Assembly: GCA_013115145.1 (NCBI GenBank)
Contig: JAAPAO010000051.1
Location: 1 to 64,000 of the forward strand
Direction of reading: 5' to 3'
DNA: 64,000 nt
DNA from: Perkinsus chesapeaki ATCC PRA-425
Lineage: Eukaryota > Protista > Perkinsozoa
A program made the position numbers and the translations under genes. The notes beneath the pieces were generated by a model. It had not been told where the DNA came from. It made no database searches and worked only from the letters and a program-made list of their open reading frames with translations. This document shows, in pieces, positions 17,311 through 25,435 of this stretch. Positions within the stretch are counted from its first letter, which is position 1. Each line of letters opens with the position of its first letter.

Positions 17311-17443
17311 TTTCCTATTCGGCTAGTGACTTTGTGTTTTTGAGTTATTTACAACCGCATATGACTTGAACGAGAAGCAGGCATGCAAGTTCAACAGAAA
17401 CGTTACCGAAACACATCATGCTTGGCTGGAATTACGAGTGGTT

Positions 17444-18446
17444 TCATGCTGGTTGTCCCCTGCGGAGTCGTGTAGCGTCTCTGATGCCTCTGGTCCCTCC
17501 ACCATTCCCACGGTCGACGGCAAGCTGACGTACCGGATCGACAGCTGCAGTTCCTTGAAGCACTTTGGCTCTAAAGACACTGGTATTGCTATTAAGCGCT
17601 TGGCATCAAAAGAAACTAGTTTGGCTGCTGCTTTTGCTATTCCTCTGAAAGATGAAAATGACAACCTTATCAACGTGGCGTGTACATACCGGACAGCCAT
17701 AGCAAGTGCTATGTCCCCACGAGCATGCACTGTTATATCCTCCTCTCCATCTCTGCATCGATTGTAAATGAGTGTTCCTAGCCTGTGTGGCTCGGTCGAC
17801 TGGGACACTTTAATAACATCAGTAACGAGTGGGTCTGGTGCAGTCCAGAGCTACGAACGAAAACAACTAACCACGGTAACGACTATCGATCAACTACCGG
17901 CTCGCTAGCCGGAAAAGGAACAGGAAGCAAATGGTAGATTCTGACCGAAGGGTCATTCGTTCCAGGTATCGAGCCATATCCCATAGCCTAAGATAACGAG
18001 CAATAGAATAGAAGATTCCCAAGTATGAACTGAGCACTGACCTTCTGTACTTCATCACGAGAGTGGTATTGGAGATCTCGAATGGGCGTAACTCCGATCA
18101 ACTGTGAAGGCTTATCGGGAGATGACACCAATTTACTATTCACTCTTGCAGGTGCCTGGAAAGTCTCTTTGAAGCACTTATCCAGGTATACACTACTTAC
18201 TCTTATCGCTTGGGCTGTTGGCACTATACCGATGCATCTGAGGGAAGTCCCACTCAAACTTTGGGGTCCCTCTTTGAGGTGCCGCCGAAGGTGGCGAGTT
18301 ACAAACTGTATCTACAGCGACTCCAACTGGACAAGTCCTACAACCCATACTGTAAGTATTACTTGTCTTCTGTCAGCGCCTACACCAAGCCATGCACCAG
18401 GGGTCGGAAGAGCTTCGAGTACCTCAGTTATTGCTTTGTTCCTCAT
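17444..18446 (-). CDS. Multi-exon protein with C-terminal SpoVS-like (Alba-fold) domain
   Basis: Clear minus-strand GT-AG introns. The spliced C-terminus DVIKVSQSTEPHRLGTLIYNRCRDGEEDITVHARGDIALAMAVRGIAKAAAKLVSFDAKRLIAIP aligns by eye to B. subtilis SpoVS (EILKVSAKSSP...QAIGAGALNQAVKAVAIA...LICIP). Start codon and 5' exons unresolved. Confidence 0.7.
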
Positions 18447-18558: not shown

Positions 18559-21500
18559 TCAAGGTGTTATGTCTAGGTATTCATTCGCCCATTGGCGATG
18601 CGCTTTTCGAGCGAAAAGCTGTTCAATCGCAGTGGGAAGGTGACCAGTAACATACTTTGAAAGCCAGGAGAAAGGAAACCATTCCCAATCAAGCATCATT
18701 CGAATTCCCCAATCCGTATCGCTGGTGGACCTAATCGAGCAGACAATATGCTCCACTTCATAATGGTGGCCCTCTACAGGTATCGGGATTCCTCTATATA
18801 GAGGTGTATCGGGCGCATGCCACGACCGTCCGCTTCACCATTCCTCTCAATACGATCGTAAGACGAGACGTGCCTCACACAAAGGTCGTCCATTTCTGGT
18901 AAACTGGTGATCAGGTTCACTGTTATAGGGAAGCACCTGAGGCCCGACAGGAAGCCTTGCTAGATGATCCAACTCTCGAAGACTCGTACTTTCGCGTCCA
19001 CGGTCGATCAGCCAATGAAGTCGAATATAGCTGCGCTCCCGCTGTGTAATTCATATTCTCATGGATTCGTCCCTGTAGTTGTGCTATGACGTCAAATAAA
19101 GATGTATTGTAATCACAAGGGATGAATCCCAAGTCTGCGTACTCCGCAAAGAAACCGAACATTCGAGACTGTTCCTGACCGGGCCATGACGGTACCACAT
19201 GCGACCTCGGTGCCATTCTCTTACCACACTGTCATCGCGGTTCGTTCGCATGAGCATCAACGGTATTGAATCCCACTCCAATGCTCGGCCAAGGCTTATC
19301 ATGACTACCGCCAAAACAACGATCTCCGTTGGAACTTGGAGCTCCTTGGCAATGATAGCCAAACCGCGGGTGGTACTGCGACTAAGCCAGAGCGTACCTG
19401 TAATTTCTTGTAACACTAAGACCGTATCATAGATGTTACGAGTTCTATTGTCAGCACTCGGCCTCCGAATCTCCATAGCCTGTCTTAAGCGTAGATATTT
19501 CTCGCTACCTTCGATACCATCGAAAAGACGGTGTTGTAGTGTCGGAAAGCAACAAACACTCGGCGGTGGAACCTAACTATCGAATGGAAAATGAAGCAAC
19601 AACGTTATGATGAAAATACCTCTCCAGTAGCAACTTGCTTTAGGACCAGGTCGAGCTCTCGAGCCATCGGTGCAACACAGAAACCGTCCGCGAACAGATG
19701 AGTGAATCGAACGTAAATATAGAACCACCGAAAAGCTGAGCCACGAAAGGCTGGACCAACTACTGAAAACGATTGGTACCTTCCGTTTTGGTATCCACAC
19801 CACGCGGGAGAAGAATATGAAATTCGATGGGTGCTGTGAATGCCTCAGTGAACTTCAGGCGAACAACCAAGTCCCTGAGAGACTTCGATGCCCTCGACTC
19901 TGATTTCGAGCTCGTGAAGTACCTACCAAAAGAATGAAGGGTCGGACTGCAAGATCGCTCACTTTTCATGTATTGGCACAATAGATTTGCTTTGCTCCTT
20001 CCGTGGACCAACCCTTGGCCAACAACTTTTTACGGCTTGTTGCACCCAAGTCGACTCGAGACCAGTTGCCGATGCTAGACTCAAGACCTCCCTACAGCAC
20101 TCTTGTAGTTCTAGTGGATCCAGTGGATAAGAGCGGAAAACTGGATGCCTGAAAAGGGTAGAATCCATACGATATGGATATTGATCATATCCACGCCTGT
20201 TCTCACCTGCTCACCAGAAGTTTCAATGCCTCTCGTATGCTCGATACAGTGGGAGGATGGCGTCTATCTGTATACTCGAACAGCCAGTCACAGGGAGCTC
20301 TCTTCCAGAGGTGAGTGGCGAACATGTTGATACGATATTCCGACGCAAGTGCGACTCCTCGTTCGGAATCTTTCTTTCCCACAGTCTTCGAATCTTCACC
20401 GTCGTCTACCTTCACCTCAATTTTCCTCGCCAAGTCGCCGAGTGTATTGCAGGCCATGACTTCTCGTGGGTTCAACTGAGATGCAGTAACCATTAGACGC
20501 AATCTTAATGAGCGTACATTAATGCCCCATCTATGTGAGGCCTTGGCACACAACAAAACCGTGCTCAGTGAGGATATCCCAGCCAGGCTACTTGTAGATG
20601 AGCAGCCACCTCTGTCCCCAGATTCCCAGCCGAGACTTTGCAGCAGAGACCCGACAATGCCCACGGTATCGCTCTCGTCAGTGGGGGAGATATTCGGAGC
20701 AGACTTTCGAGGGGGACGCCGTAACGGTGGACGAGTATTGGTACCATTGAGCTTTACGTCAACCAGCTGTATATCATCCCACAGGCAGGACTCGCATACA
20801 AACCTGACCAAATCGAAGGTGGCCATTTCATTGACCAACTGTTAACCTCACTCATATTTGCCATGTCTCTTGACTTTTTGCGAATTTTGCGTACTAGTGG
20901 AAGTTGTGGTACTATCACACGAACTAAGACTTAAAGGAATGCAGGTTGGAATAGAACGATCTGAGGCGACTCACCCATCTCGGCCTTGGGCTTTCCAGTT
21001 AACCTCAGACTCTCTCCATCGCCATTTCCCATGGCTCTCTCGGAACCAGCAGTCTTTGTTGTCTTTAGTTCTGCAGTTCTTACGAACATCACAGTGATAC
21101 CAGCGATCTCTATTCACTTTGGCGATCGGTCGTTTCTTCTTTGGCTGCCGAGCTTTTGGCTTTGGTACGTTGCCATAATTGGTGATTGCCCCAATCAGTT
21201 TCGATATCATGGAAGCTTTCTTGCTTACTGCTGCGCCTACCGACATTGACCTCGTGACTCTAGTTAATATGCCTCCCAGATACCAACAGATGAGCCGCAG
21301 AGGATTCTTCAGGTAGGGCTTCCAATTATTCCAACGCCACTGATGTGACAGGTAGATGCCGGCCTCCACTGAGCTTATCGTAGGCCAAAATAACACTTGC
21401 CTCAGTGGGAAGGTTATGCATACGAACACTAGTATGAGCATCTGAATACTCCACCATGTGTGTGCAAGGGTCACAGCCAAGCTAGCTTTGAGACAGTACT

Positions 21501-23915
21501 CGCCGTAGGGGAATGCATCCTCGAACCAGGAGATAAAGGAGGTACAAATTTGTGCGCAACTCTTGGCAAATCGCTCTAGAGAATCCTCTGTTTCAATCGA
21601 AGCACCACAAGCAGGTGACGTATCCGATTGTATAGCAATCGCAGCATAGTCCAAAAGAGGATAATAGAAGAAGATTACCAACATTAACGATAGGAATAGC
21701 GAGTAAAAGGTACCGCGGCAGATAAAATGGCCCAGGACGGAAAACACTGTTATCAACAAGAGGTGTATGGACACCCCAAGGTAAACTGCCGCACGGGACC
21801 TCGCGACCGACTTCGGCATAAGGCCTCCACCAAGTTCATAGAGTTCGCGGTAACTAGTATCATCCGGTAGAAGCCCGTCTGCGGGTTGTGCTAGAGGTGG
21901 TGGTCGGGCTGTAACCATGGAGAGCAATTCTCTCTTAACGACCTTGCCTGTTACTGGATGCGTGGGTAGCCACGCACTTGGTACGAGAAAATGCATGCAC
22001 TGGGTTGACATCCCCGGCAAACTACTACGTATAGCCGCCAATGCTCTCGGCACGCTGATACGACATGTCTGTCCAAATCTCATAACGGCATGTATTTCAC
22101 CGCCTGGAACTCCGTGATCTACGATCAACATAACTTTACTATCACCACCTAAAGTCTGAGCCATAGCATCTTCTAACATGGATATTTTCGCAAAGGCTCC
22201 ACCGACCTTGATCAGGTCACCCTCACGACCCAGACATTCCACCAGAGATCGGCAGCATCCACCGCTGGAAGCCACGAGCCTGACTACATCCTCTGTTTCG
22301 AACATCGCAGTGTGGACAGTCGTTTCATAATGTGAGGAAGGCACACCATCGCATGTGACAGAATCCGTGTTGGGTAGAGGGCCACTGACATATCCCGGTG
22401 TAACCATTCTCCCACTCATAACCATTGTCCCCGTATCTGTGGATGAACCGAGAGGCTTGGTGCTGACCTCGCATCCAGATACGATCCTGTAACGAACAGG
22501 TGGGGCAATGCCTTTAGGGCTGGTAGGCGTGCGCAAGCAGTAGAGCGATAGCCAATATCTGAGTTACATAGTTTACATCACAAAGGAACACAATAGGACA
22601 ACTACTCGGTTGCCACCAGCAGCTCTATTATCGTTGCACTTGCCCACTTGTTGACTACGGTTTGGGGACAAGCTTCACCCCAAGTAAAAACCAGCTATGC
22701 AAAGCCACCAACTAAAACTGCGAGCTTGCCTCATAACACCTACCAGTTTCTTTTCCCGTATTGTACCACCCCTGCTCCACCACTCTTCTTGAGGAGGAGG
22801 CATGGCTTCCATCAGAGTCGGCACCAGACCAGCTATAACAGTATCATATCTCCCAGACATCATGCTATATTTTATCATATTATACGGCCCCTCGGTAACC
22901 CCCATAGAGCCAAGTTTGGTCTGAGTAGGCGACGATGAGGGAATGATCTGAGAGCATCGATAGCAGGACTCTGAGCTCTGGATAGCAGCCAAGCTACGAG
23001 GGTTCCTCCGAATGCTAAGCAGATATCCACCTGTCCATAGCAACTTGCTGCCCAGTAGACACTGCCTGATAGGGTCGATACAAAGGAGTTTACCAAGCAA
23101 AAGTCTACACTTACTTGAGTTGATCACAGCAGACCTTCCGACTCCTTTCCATGTCGATGGAATAACTTCGCCGTAATTATCCAGTTCATGCATTATCATG
23201 CCTAGAGTGATGCGAACACATTTGCTACTGGCGGTCGAACCTACCAACGAGCACAACACTAGGATGGTGCAGGTGAAAGCAATGGGCTTACCTCCGGTGA
23301 AGTGGAAAGCGGCAGTCTCATCGTCATGGAAACGATGAGCAATGAGGAAGTCATCGTCACATTCCTCGCGGCCGGTAGACGATAGAATAGTCTCGACATC
23401 CACCCGATGACAATCGATGCCCGCATCGGCACCAATTAGTAGGACTGGTTCCAACAGCTGTTGCACTTGCACAGCTCTCGCTTCCTCCTGGTCTCTGGGC
23501 ACCTCAACTCCCCCACTGGTTAGGCTAACTGTTGGTATTCCGGCTAGTAAACACCCCAAGTACCTACATAGCCTTATGGCCTGAGGTGTGTCGAAGCCAC
23601 TTACACTATGTACCAATCTATTCCTCTGGTAAGGCTCAGTGCAACAGTTCTGCGAGAGCTACCACCCTCCGAGTGGAACAAGGAGTTGTTACGTAGATAT
23701 TCGTGAATGTCTACCCCACACTTAACAGCTTTTCTATAGAGTTCATCATACGTTATCTGACCTCGACAAGCCTGAGAGTCTTTGCTGTGCCATATGGATA
23801 CCTGTTTTAGGACATCTCCCTCCTGGCCCATCTCAATGGCTGCGACAGTACTCTTGTCCGATGCAGCATTCCGGAACCAGTCATTAAAGGTGGTTATTGG
23901 AGCTCGGGTACTCAT
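18559..23915 (-). CDS. Single-module NRPS-like enzyme: adenylation - transmembrane insert - carrier (T) - condensation domain
   Basis: A domain: ITYDELYRKA, VALSLTRG, AFHFTGGSTASSKCV, LVPTLM, FTWGEA, FETEDVVR, LGREGDLIKVGG, LPTHPVTGKV. Then hydrophobic helices; T: LAGISSLSTV...TLGDLARKI; C: ALKLLVSRHPVFRS, THLFADG, LAIIAKELQVPTEIVVLAV, FGFFAEY. Exons can be joined in frame with GT-AG introns of 36-51 nt at the junctions I checked. Confidence 0.82.
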
Positions 23916-24129: not shown

Positions 24130-24459
24130 TTACCACATCTCCCAGGGCTTGAATCCCCAGACGGCACACTGGTAGGCAAAGTCATTTTGGAACTCGTCAT
24201 CTTCGAAGTCTAAATAACCCACTTCGGCCAGAGCAAACTCTATAGGATCAACCGTGCCATCTTTATTAATCCAGCTTGGACCATTTTCGTTGTCTGGAGC
24301 GGTACCATATCTAGTAACCCTAAGGCCGTCCTTGCTGGTCTTGTCGATGTATCCATCCGTAGAGCAGATACTGCACTCGTGCTTGTCCTCACCGTGATCA
24401 CTAGCCTGAGGTTGTCCTTCGCTCCTTGGAGAAGTCTTCCTCCCAGTGTTGGTTGGCAT
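24130..24459 (-). CDS. Small intronless protein, GFKPWEMW-family copy 1 (109 aa; CxxC in N-terminal part)
   Basis: ORF MPTNTG...GPSWINKDGTVDPIEFALAEVGYLDFEDDEFQNDFAYQCAVWGFKPWEMW*; paralogy with the two neighbours supports coding status. Confidence 0.85.
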   Translation of the reverse strand: MPTNTGRKTSPRSEGQPQASDHGEDKHECSICSTDGYIDKTSKDGLRVTRYGTAPDNENGPSWINKDGTVDPIEFALAEVGYLDFEDDEFQNDFAYQCAVWGFKPWEMW

Positions 24460-24614
24460 TGAGATCAAAGGAAAGAGACCTGCGATGAGCGTAGTCCTCC
24501 TATACCGTCCAACTACAAAACTAAACAAATGTATGTAGTCTTGAAAGCATTAAATGATCCTCATCAAAGAGAATGAACTTGGCCAGGTTACCGGCCAAAG
24601 CATTTCATCAGCAA

Positions 24615-24848
24615 TTACCACATCTCCCAGGGCTTAAATCCATACATAACACACGCTTGTTCGAAATCTTCTTGGAAGTTCTCATCTTCGAAATCGCAGT
24701 GACCAACCTCTTCAATAGCGAATTGAACAGGGTCTACGGTACCATCGTCATTAATCCATCCGATGCCATTGTCCGCTGGCTCTTGGTCATTGCCTTGATT
24801 GTCGGCATATCCCTGATCATTGGCGGCTTGATTATCGTTAGAAGACAT
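24615..24848 (-). CDS. Small intronless protein, GFKPWEMW-family copy 2 (77 aa; acidic N/D/Q-rich N-terminus)
   Basis: ORF MSSNDN...GIGWINDDGTVDPVQFAIEEVGHCDFEDENFQEDFEQACVMYGFKPWEMW*. Confidence 0.85.
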   Translation of the reverse strand: MSSNDNQAANDQGYADNQGNDQEPADNGIGWINDDGTVDPVQFAIEEVGHCDFEDENFQEDFEQACVMYGFKPWEMW

Positions 24849-25156
24849 CGAGAAGGGAGATCGAACGTCCACTGAAATAATTCGAGCTCAAGTAGACGAC
24901 GAAACCGGGATGTTCTCAACAACAGTATCTTATCGGTGAGCGGATGGCTAGAGCTCCCTTGTGTGTTGTGACAGCATGTACATGGAGTGGTCCAAGCTCA
25001 CGCATTCGACTTCAAACGCAACTCAAACGAAACTAGTCAAACTAATCGATAATGGAGTATAACATGAAGTAGTGATGACGCTGACATCGAGGTCAGCCCG
25101 ACAAAGACTACAGCTGCTTTCACAGCCGCCAATGAATTACTGAGTCGCCATCGCGT

Positions 25157-25435
25157 TTAACTGTTGCCACTCCACATCTCCCACGGTTTGAAACCGTACA
25201 TGGCACAGGCATGATTAAACTTCTCATCAAAATGATCGTGACCAGGAGCGAAGTAGCCGACCTCTCTCTGGGCGAACTCGACCGGATCGACAGATCCATC
25301 CTTGTTGAGCCAGCTTGGTCCATAAGATTCTTGCTTACCGCCTCCTCTAGAAGACCCACCATTTCCTCTGGTGGCAGTACCACCGTTACTTTTGCCGCCA
25401 TTTTTACCACTGCTAGACGAGTTACCTTTGGGCAT
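25157..25435 (-). CDS. Small intronless protein, GFKPWEMW-family copy 3 (92 aa; Gly/Ser/Asn/Lys-rich N-terminus)
   Basis: ORF MPKGNSSSSG...GPSWLNKDGSVDPVEFAQREVGYFAPGHDHFDEKFNHACAMYGFKPWEMWSGNS*. Confidence 0.85.
   Translation of the reverse strand: MPKGNSSSSGKNGGKSNGGTATRGNGGSSRGGGKQESYGPSWLNKDGSVDPVEFAQREVGYFAPGHDHFDEKFNHACAMYGFKPWEMWSGNS

What the first reader, a model, noticed from the sequence alone, without database searches (positions are those of the whole stretch)
18559..23915. Stand-alone NRPS-like enzyme with the unusual order A - membrane segments - T - terminal C
Seen: spliced exons give a full adenylation domain, a carrier domain with a Ser motif (GISSL, 20566-20580) and a condensation domain with a His motif (THLFADG, 19683-19703), ending in a stop at 18559 with no thioesterase or reductase domain. 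Established: elongation modules run C-A-T, and a terminal C domain usually releases product onto an external nucleophile or cyclises it. Inference: this is a membrane-anchored ligase that attaches an activated amino or carboxylic acid to a lipid, amine or protein acceptor in a parasite lineage not known for such chemistry. I do not recall this architecture being described.
Basis: partly seen in the sequence, partly recalled or inferred. Interest (0 to 1): 0.88.

Follow-up and report, generated by a model that had tools for sequence, protein, structure and literature searches.

The report
Membrane-embedded single-module NRPS-like enzyme
This Perkinsus chesapeaki gene encodes one 1500-residue enzyme with an acid-activating domain, membrane helices, a cysteine-rich finger, a carrier domain and a terminal condensation domain; the same layout is conserved in perkinsids and dinoflagellates, and I found no paper that describes it.

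Summary
Window 23915-18559 (minus strand) is one gene of Perkinsus chesapeaki: 19 exons, 18 GT-AG introns of 40-58 nt, 1500 aa. The domain order is A, hydrophobic helices, Cys-rich finger, T, terminal C.

The stop at 18559 is correct. The GenBank model KAF4675158.1 overruns it and fuses a downstream SpoVS-like gene.

- **A domain:** Pfam E 7e-16; family profile against solved NRPS A domains E 6e-74.
- **T-C:** family profile against PCP-C structures E 1e-18 to 1e-16. An AlphaFold model (pLDDT 80, pTM 0.82) matches PCP-C didomains at E 1e-18.
- **Catalytic residues:** the A10 Lys, carrier Ser and HxxxD His and Asp are invariant in 28 relatives.
- **One gene:** an uncultured perkinsid-like relative encodes the whole layout in one uninterrupted ORF. 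P. olseni shares the exon structure. No RNA data exist for this species.
- **Substrate:** the Asp that binds an alpha-amino group is absent family-wide, so it is probably not a free alpha-amino acid.

The most likely function is a membrane-anchored acyl transferase acting on a free nucleophile. The acceptor is unknown. It is a new variant of a known kind. Known analogues are the fungal A-T-C esterifying enzymes and the membrane-bound poly-lysine synthetases.

The parts
18559..23915 (-). Whole gene: 19 exons, 1500 aa. Exons (high to low): 23915-23802, 23756-23605, 23563-23292, 23240-23115, 23065-22998, 22947-22744, 22694-22606, 22558-20975, 20923-20852, 20803-20518, 20475-20207, 20148-19963, 19922-19780, 19735-19620, 19572-19440, 19397-19225, 19174-18990, 18936-18778, 18730-18559.
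   Evidence: The annotated protein P0001 was mapped back onto the window. The corrected model has no internal stop and all introns are GT-AG, 40-58 nt. Its C-terminus matches the P. olseni orthologue.
21919..23915 (-). Adenylation domain, residues 1 to about 555. Motifs: A3 FTGGSTASSK at 23301-23221 (spans intron 3); A5-like ELLVATE at 22625-22558; A8 GREGDLIKVGG at 22230-22198; A10 Lys codon at 21945-21943.
   Evidence: Pfam AMP-binding E 7e-16. Family profile against solved NRPS A domains E 6e-74 to 1e-30. Invariant D432, G452, R453, K459, T545 and K547 in 26-28 relatives.
21181..21813 (-). Hydrophobic helical module, residues about 591-801. Strongest cores at 21789-21733, 21708-21652 and 21441-21385; a weaker one at 21498-21442.
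   Evidence: Hydropathy peaks 2.0-2.2. AlphaFold helices at 591-623, 629-655, 694-724, 727-752 and others, with pLDDT about 70-80. Hydrophobic segments occur at the same place in 26 of the 27 relatives tested. No Pfam, fold or Atlas match.
20779..21102 (-). Cys-rich finger. WYHC-x5-C-x7-CW (21102-21046) lies in exon 8 and FVCESCLW (20802-20779) in exon 10. Between them are intron 8 (20974-20924), mini-exon 9 (20923-20852) and intron 9 (20851-20804).
   Evidence: The motif CxxC...[W/F/Y]xCxxC is found between the membrane part and T in 22 of 28 relatives. The window's variant is conserved in P. olseni. The model confidence here is low, so metal binding is inferred only.
20416..20679 (-). Carrier (T) domain, residues 936-1009 of the corrected model. 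GISSL is at 20580-20566. The invariant Ser codon is at 20571-20569. The domain is interrupted by a 42-nt in-frame intron at 20517-20476.
   Evidence: The Ser is invariant in 28 sequences. PP-binding is found in 12 of 27 relatives, best E 1e-7; it did not match the window's own T-C piece at E <= 0.01, and the raw T ORF gave only E 0.19. Carrier proteins appear in the profile search against PDB. P. olseni has an intron at the same place. The 14 residues this stretch would encode coincide with the lowest-confidence stretch of the model's T domain, pLDDT under 50.
18559..20340 (-). Terminal condensation domain, residues about 1035-1500. The C2-like RHPVFRS spans intron 11 (20208-20130). THLFADG is at 19703-19683 (His codon 19700-19698, Asp codon 19688-19686). 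The stop is at 18561-18559.
   Evidence: Foldseek matches to NRPS PCP-C and C domains at E 1e-18 to 1e-13. Profile against 7kvw PCP-C E 8e-17. Pfam Condensation in 14 of 27 relatives, best E 7e-13; the window's own is only 0.0055. His and Asp are invariant.

Best explanation
This is one protein, a membrane-embedded single-module NRPS-like enzyme.

Shown:
- It has an NRPS-type adenylation domain with all catalytic motifs.
- This is followed by several hydrophobic helices, a Cys-rich finger, a carrier domain with the conserved Ser, and a C-terminal condensation-fold domain with the conserved His and Asp.
- There is no further carrier, thioesterase or reductase domain.

Inferred mechanism:
1. The A domain adenylates one conserved carboxylic acid. 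This is probably not a free alpha-amino acid, because the amino-binding Asp is missing throughout the family.
2. The A domain loads the acid as a thioester on the phosphopantetheine arm of T.
3. The terminal C domain passes the acyl group to a hydroxyl or amine of a free acceptor that is not carried on the enzyme. The fungal A-T-C enzymes AneB and ThmA work in this way.

Inferred topology:
- The stretch after the last helix is strongly basic (18 Lys/Arg against 1 Asp/Glu in 70 residues).
- A must reach T to load it.
- So the helices most likely cross the membrane an even number of times, leaving all catalytic domains on the cytosolic face.
- The helices would then hold the enzyme at a membrane. 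There it could meet a lipid-like acceptor or hand its product to the membrane.
For: One gene:
- The 1380-aa relative P0006 is a single uninterrupted ORF (L001 6001-10143) with the same order A, helices, finger, T, C.
- The succinate dehydrogenase gene close by on the same contig, two genes downstream, is 80% identical to that of P. chesapeaki.
- Dinoflagellate transcript-derived complete ORFs carry both AMP-binding and Condensation domains.
- P. olseni has the same exon structure across the junction.
- The stop after exon 8 lies inside a perfect GTGAGT donor.
- The reading frame is kept whether or not mini-exon 9 is included.

Domains.

Catalytic residues are invariant in 26-28 relatives: K547, S972, H1215 and D1219 in P0001 numbering.

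Amino-binding Asp:
- The equivalent position is G, A, P or S in all 26 relatives. The register comes from the HMMER alignment to a solved A domain.

Membrane part: hydropathy and basic flank.

Precedent:
- A terminal C domain with xHxxxD esterifies a free alcohol in AneB. There the first His of the motif is dispensable (PMC10720950).
Against: - No transcript data exist for this species, so the splicing is inferred. The two small RNA runs listed hold nothing of the locus.
- The window's own T and C domains fall below Pfam's thresholds when scored alone: PP-binding E 0.19, Condensation E 0.0055.
- The membrane part is modelled with low confidence (pLDDT 60). The number of helices differs between relatives, and a few dinoflagellate members show weak or no hydrophobic peaks.
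- No dedicated topology predictor was available.
- The substrate and the acceptor are unknown.
- The mapping of specificity positions rests on one profile alignment and on my memory of the GrsA numbering.
Confidence: 0.6

Rival explanations
1. There are two genes. An A-plus-membrane protein ends at the TGA at 20973-20971, and a separate T-C protein starts at the in-frame ATG at 20826.
For: An in-frame stop follows exon 8. An in-frame ATG lies 145 nt downstream, inside what I call intron 9. There are no RNA data for this species.
Against: - An intron-free relative has everything in one ORF.
- About 65 relatives of 1300-1650 aa, including transcript-derived ones, have the same order.
- The stop lies within a GTGAGT donor.
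- P. olseni has GT-AG sites at the same places, and stops if read through.
- The Cys-rich finger would be cut in two.
Confidence: 0.05
2. The terminal C domain does not use a free acceptor. Instead it condenses the loaded acyl group with a substrate held on the carrier domain of another protein, for example the paralogue KAF4662661.1. The protein would then be one part of a multi-protein assembly line.
For: P. chesapeaki has at least one deep paralogue with the same layout, P0005 at 24-27% identity. Canonical C domains take a carrier-bound acceptor. The best fold matches are elongation C domains of LgrA, DhbF and TycC.
Against: No multi-module NRPS partner turned up among the relatives. The family is always single-module. 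The (S/T)HxxxDG motif, lacking the first His, is like that of fungal terminal C domains that use free acceptors.
Confidence: 0.15
3. The C domain releases the product by self-condensation. This would be cyclisation, dimerisation or repeated oligomerisation of the loaded unit at the membrane, in the spirit of the fungal C_T domains or the membrane-bound poly-lysine synthetases.
For: Terminal T-C pairs of fungal NRPSs (hasD, sirP) and PpsE are among the best structural matches. Poly-lysine synthetases show that membrane-bound A-T enzymes can polymerise their own substrate (PMC10522769).
Against: The missing amino-binding Asp argues against a diamino or amino acid that could polymerise. The poly-lysine layout is absent here: it has six helices in three pairs after T, with three beta-helix domains.
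Confidence: 0.12
4. The hydrophobic stretch is not a membrane anchor. It is a buried helical linker domain of a soluble enzyme.
For: The model confidence is low. The sequence is poorly conserved, with 15% mean column identity. Some dinoflagellate members have weak or no hydropathy peaks.
Against: Three 19-residue windows reach hydropathy of 2.0 or more in the window protein. No other segment of the protein does so; only one buried helix of the C domain (residues 1293-1311, score 1.86) comes near. Such segments occur at the same position in 26 of 27 relatives. The flank is strongly basic, as expected at a membrane surface.
Confidence: 0.1

Closest known systems
Fungal single-module A-T-C NRPSs (AneB, ThmA, FlvI; PMC10720950)
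   Same: One A, one T and a terminal C domain, with no thioesterase. The C motif lacks the first His (QHxxxD in AneB, THxxxDG here), and its His and Asp are the essential residues. The acyl group goes to a free acceptor that is not carrier-bound.
   Different: The fungal enzymes are soluble, with A directly followed by T, and they activate alpha-amino acids. Here about 380 residues of hydrophobic helices and a Cys-rich finger separate A from T. The amino-binding Asp is absent. Sequence similarity is only at superfamily level.
Epsilon-poly-L-lysine synthetase family (Pls, PosA; PMC10522769)
   Same: An NRPS-like enzyme with one A and one T domain that is built into the membrane.
   Different: In Pls the membrane part comes after T. 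It has six helices in three pairs that alternate with three beta-helix-type soluble regions, and there is no classical condensation domain. Here the helices lie between A and T, and a classical condensation-fold domain ends the protein.
Canonical bacterial and fungal NRPS modules (LgrA, DhbF, TycC, fuscachelin PCP-C)
   Same: These are the best sequence-profile and fold matches for the A, T and C parts.
   Different: Those are soluble, multi-module proteins with the order C-A-T. Their A domains carry the Asp235 equivalent for amino acids, and their motif is HHxxxDG.

Membership tests
NRPS-type adenylation domain (ANL superfamily) | Core motifs A3, A5, A7 and A8, and the A10 catalytic Lys | tested here: met
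   Pfam AMP-binding E 7e-16. Family profile against solved A domains E 6e-74. K547, D432, G452, R453 and K459 are invariant. The best NCBIfam model is the amino-acid adenylation domain, but below its cut-off.
NRPS-type adenylation domain specific for alpha-amino acids | Asp at the GrsA-235 position, which binds the alpha-amino group | tested here: not met
   The aligned position is G (11), A (8), P (6) or S (1) in 26 relatives, and Ala in the window. The register comes from one HMMER alignment.
Carrier (PP-binding) domain | A four-helix carrier fold with Ser in a GxDS-like motif at the start of helix 2 | tested here: met
   GISSL has an invariant second Ser. Pfam PP-binding is found in 12 of 27 relatives, best E 1e-7. 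Fold matches cover PCP-C didomains from the carrier onward. The window's own Pfam score is below threshold.
Carrier (PP-binding) domain | The Ser is actually phosphopantetheinylated | not testable with these tools
   This needs mass spectrometry or an in vitro loading assay.
NRPS condensation domain | The two-lobed chloramphenicol-acetyltransferase-like fold with the HHxxxDG motif at the lobe interface | tested here: met
   Model pLDDT 79.9 and pTM 0.82. Foldseek E 1e-18 to 1e-13 against solved C domains. The motif is THLFADG. The second His and the Asp are invariant, while the first His is T, S or N in the family.
Epsilon-poly-L-lysine synthetase type membrane NRPS-like enzymes | A-T followed by six helices in three pairs, interleaved with three soluble regions of about 180 residues, and no classical C domain | tested here: not met
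   The helices lie between A and T, are not interleaved with soluble repeats, and a classical C domain is present.
Fungal soluble A-T-C esterifying NRPSs | Contiguous A-T-C, and transfer to a free alcohol | tested here: inconclusive
   The order A, T, terminal C and the xHxxxD motif agree. The insertion between A and T differs. The acceptor cannot be tested here.

The most novel reading that the evidence does not exclude
A conserved family in perkinsids and dinoflagellates defines a second, independent way of building an NRPS-like enzyme into a membrane. An orphan helical module and a zinc finger are inserted between A and T. The enzyme attaches one conserved non-amino carboxylic acid to a membrane lipid or another membrane-bound acceptor. 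Because its T and C domains mostly escape Pfam, the family would also account for part of the 'adenylation domains without condensation domains' reported in dinoflagellate surveys.
Probability: 0.35. Interest if true: 0.75.

Novelty: new variant of a known kind. Interest (0 to 1): 0.62.

Why it matters
- **A new layout for a known enzyme class.** Single-module NRPS-like enzymes are known mostly from bacteria and fungi. The only membrane-built ones described are the poly-amino-acid synthetases. Here the membrane part sits between the loading domain and the carrier, and the layout is conserved from perkinsid parasites of molluscs to reef-symbiont and bloom-forming dinoflagellates. That points to a conserved, unknown small-molecule or lipid modification in these organisms.
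- **A gap in annotation.** Databases label these proteins only as AMP-dependent ligases or hypothetical proteins. Dinoflagellate surveys noted many adenylation domains that seemed to lack condensation partners (PMC8283056, PMC6361889). This family shows that some of them do carry divergent T and C domains.
- **A direct route to function.** The pocket residues are conserved across the family, which suggests one substrate. A substrate screen on one recombinant A domain could therefore reveal the chemistry for the whole family.

Tried and rejected
- **Pfam on the ten raw ORF pieces** found nothing usable. The domains only show after splicing, or through relatives.
- **My first hand-made splice** of exons 4 and 5 (donor at 22899, 35-nt intron) was wrong. 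The annotated intron 22997-22948 agrees with P. olseni.
- **RNA evidence.** Only two tiny runs of the species were listed. Neither holds the locus, and laying them gave zero reads.
- **The membrane and finger part.**
  - The AlphaFold DB cluster search gave only E of 0.07 or worse, with TM-scores under 0.25.
  - The Atlas feature search scored 0.46 or less.
  - Pfam found nothing.
  - So this part has no recognisable relatives outside the family.
- **The neighbouring small genes ending in GFKPWEMW.** I asked whether they are functionally tied to the enzyme. They also lie beside the orthologue in P. olseni. They do not lie beside the relative in the uncultured perkinsid-like genome. This looks like plain synteny within the genus.
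Full report
**What is in the sequence**

The minus strand between 23915 and 18559 carries a chain of short ORFs in changing frames, separated by short GT-AG stretches.
- ATG at 23915;
- GISSL at 20580-20566;
- THLFADG at 19703-19683;
- stop TGA at 18561-18559.

Pfam on the ten raw ORF pieces found nothing usable, the best being PP-binding at E 0.19. The claim therefore had to be tested on a spliced product and on relatives.

**Identity and gene model**

I ran an exhaustive HMMER search with the 528-aa exon (window 22557-20974). It returned the genome's own annotated protein at 100% identity, P0001 of 1692 aa. It also returned orthologues at 51-56% and three distant full-length relatives.

The cluster look-up names P0001 as KAF4675158.1 of Perkinsus chesapeaki. 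It also names an orthologue in P. olseni (KAF4667755.1, P0079) and a deep paralogue in P. chesapeaki (KAF4662661.1, P0005).

I mapped P0001 back onto the window, which gave exact GT-AG boundaries. Two corrections to the GenBank model follow.

1. **The 3' end.** After '...FSWLSK' (18655) the annotation splices on to exons down to 17419. That tail gives a weak SpoVS match. The open frame in fact continues to the stop at 18559. The resulting tail is nearly identical to the true C-terminus of the P. olseni protein and aligns with the ends of the distant relatives.
2. **An extra intron in the T domain.** The stretch 20517-20476 starts with GT, ends with AG, is 42 nt long and is in frame.
   - P. 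olseni has an intron at exactly this point.
   - The 14 residues it would encode are missing from the orthologue.
   - They coincide with the lowest-confidence stretch of the T domain in the model.

The corrected model has 19 exons, 18 introns of 40-58 nt and 1500 residues, with no internal stop. My own first guess for exons 4 and 5 was wrong and was replaced by the annotated intron, which agrees with P. olseni.

**One gene or two**

No RNA data are available. Only two 5-Mb runs of the species were listed, and none of their contigs lies on the locus. The comparative evidence is nevertheless strong.

- **An intron-free relative.** The relative P0006 (1380 aa) is one uninterrupted ORF, L001 6001-10143, in a very compact genome. 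It has the same order: A, hydrophobic segments, CxxC finger, carrier Ser, HxxxD. The succinate dehydrogenase gene two genes downstream on that contig is most similar, among named proteins, to that of P. chesapeaki at 80%. The source is therefore an uncultured perkinsid-like organism.
- **A consistent family.** About 65 eukaryotic relatives of 1300-1650 aa share the layout. They include complete ORFs from dinoflagellate transcriptome assemblies that carry both AMP-binding and Condensation domains.
- **The splice sites.** In the window the stop after exon 8 lies inside a perfect GTGAGT donor. P. olseni has GT-AG sites at the same places, and runs into stops if read through.
- **The reading frame.** Mini-exon 9 is 72 nt, so the frame from exon 8 into exon 10 is kept whether or not it is used.
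- **The finger.** The Cys-rich element has its first half in exon 8 and its second half in exon 10.

I put the two-gene reading at about 5%.

**Adenylation domain**

- The spliced protein matches Pfam AMP-binding over residues 28-398 at E 7e-16.
- A profile of 26 family A domains hits solved NRPS adenylation domains at E 6e-74 to 1e-30. These rank ahead of the benzoate-CoA ligases and the other acyl-CoA and acyl-AMP ligases.
- The A7 Asp, the A8 Gly-Arg...Lys and the A10 Lys are invariant.
- In the HMMER alignment to a solved A domain, the FDxS motif aligns with the family's invariant W, then a variable residue, then A and S.
- The residue at the place of the amino-binding Asp is G, A, P or S in all 26 relatives, and Ala in the window.
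- Other pocket positions are invariant across the family, namely W317, L337 and L345. This suggests one conserved substrate. The numbering of these pocket positions relies on my memory of GrsA and was not tested.

**Carrier and condensation domains**

- A profile of 27 family T-C regions hits PvdL at E 9e-19, the fuscachelin PCP-C didomain 7kvw at 8e-17, Txo1 and Txo2, and many carrier proteins.
- Scored singly, 14 of 27 members match Pfam Condensation (best 7e-13) and 12 of 27 match PP-binding (best 1e-7). The window's own piece reaches only 0.0055 for Condensation.
- AlphaFold2 on the window's residues 930-1483, using the family alignment, gave pLDDT 79.9 and pTM 0.82.
- Foldseek placed that model on PCP-C didomains and C domains of LgrA, DhbF, TycC, fuscachelin synthetase and AmbB at E 1e-18 to 1e-14.
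- Among reviewed proteins it matched T-C pairs of PhsB, HasD, PpsE and SirP.
- The carrier Ser, which is the second Ser of GISSL, and the His and Asp of THLFADG are invariant in all relatives. The first His of the canonical HHxxxDG is T, S or N.

**Membrane part and finger**

- Between A10 and T lie about 380 residues with no Pfam match.
- Hydropathy peaks of 2.0-2.2 fall at residues 599-617, 626-644 and 715-733. A weaker segment lies just before the last of these.
- The AlphaFold model has pLDDT 60 overall and about 70-80 in the helices. It shows long helices at 591-623, 629-655, 694-724 and 727-752, plus shorter ones.
- Hydrophobic segments occur at the same place in 26 of the 27 relatives tested, although their number varies and some dinoflagellate members are weak.
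- The 70 residues after the last helix hold 18 Lys/Arg and 1 Asp/Glu.
- Neither the AlphaFold DB cluster search (best E 0.07) nor the Atlas search (0.46 or less) found any relative of this part.
- A CxxC...[W/F/Y]xCxxC motif follows in 22 of 28 members. The window and P. olseni carry a variant, WYHC-x5-C-x7-CW ... FVCESCLW.
- Zinc binding is inferred from this pattern only.

**How it most likely works**

1. The A domain activates a conserved carboxylic acid and loads it on T.
2. No carrier, thioesterase or reductase domain follows the C domain, so the acyl group is most simply passed to a free nucleophile.
3. The fungal single-module A-T-C enzymes AneB, ThmA and FlvI do exactly this with free alcohols. 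AneB has QHxxxD, and its first motif position is dispensable (PMC10720950).
4. The A domain must reach T, so both should lie on the same side of the membrane. The basic flank suggests that this side is the cytosol.
5. The helices would then tether the enzyme to a membrane, and may present or receive a hydrophobic partner.

The nature of the acid and of the acceptor is not known.

**Comparison with what is known**

- Single-module A-T-C enzymes are known, and so are membrane-bound A-T enzymes.
- The poly-lysine and poly-ornithine synthetases belong to the second group. Their membrane part follows T, consists of three helix pairs alternating with beta-helix regions, and replaces a classical C domain (PMC10522769).
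- The present layout fails the defining features of that family.
- Eight full-text searches and five papers read found no description of an A, membrane, finger, T, C enzyme in perkinsids, dinoflagellates or euglenids.
- Two dinoflagellate surveys instead report many adenylation domains that appear to lack condensation partners, or that stand alone. In one search only about 9 of the roughly 65 relatives had a precomputed Condensation hit. This family may therefore be part of that excess.

**Verdict**

It is a new variant of a known kind of enzyme, conserved across perkinsids and dinoflagellates, with unknown chemistry.

Noticed in passing
window 17419-18236 (minus strand): The GenBank model KAF4675158.1 continues past the true stop at 18559 into five further exons. 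Their product gives a weak SpoVS match (E 0.0024). This is most likely a separate downstream gene fused by the annotation.
   Followed up: partly
window 24130-25435; L002 about 1100 and 1546-1896: The small genes ending in GFKPWEMW that lie upstream of the enzyme gene in the window also lie upstream of the orthologue in P. olseni (two copies seen, one ending GFKPWDMW). None lies near the relative in the uncultured perkinsid-like contig L001. This looks like synteny within the genus rather than a functional link.
   Followed up: partly
L001 1-16143: This contig comes from a public run and belongs to an uncultured organism. Its succinate dehydrogenase is 80% identical to that of P. chesapeaki. 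Genes here lack introns and lie only 35-100 nt apart. That is a very compact genome compared with the intron-rich Perkinsus locus.
   Followed up: no
window 23801-23757 and 20517-20476: Two introns are in frame and free of stops (45 and 42 nt). Retaining either would give a longer protein rather than a truncated one. The second was missed by the GenBank annotation.
   Followed up: yes
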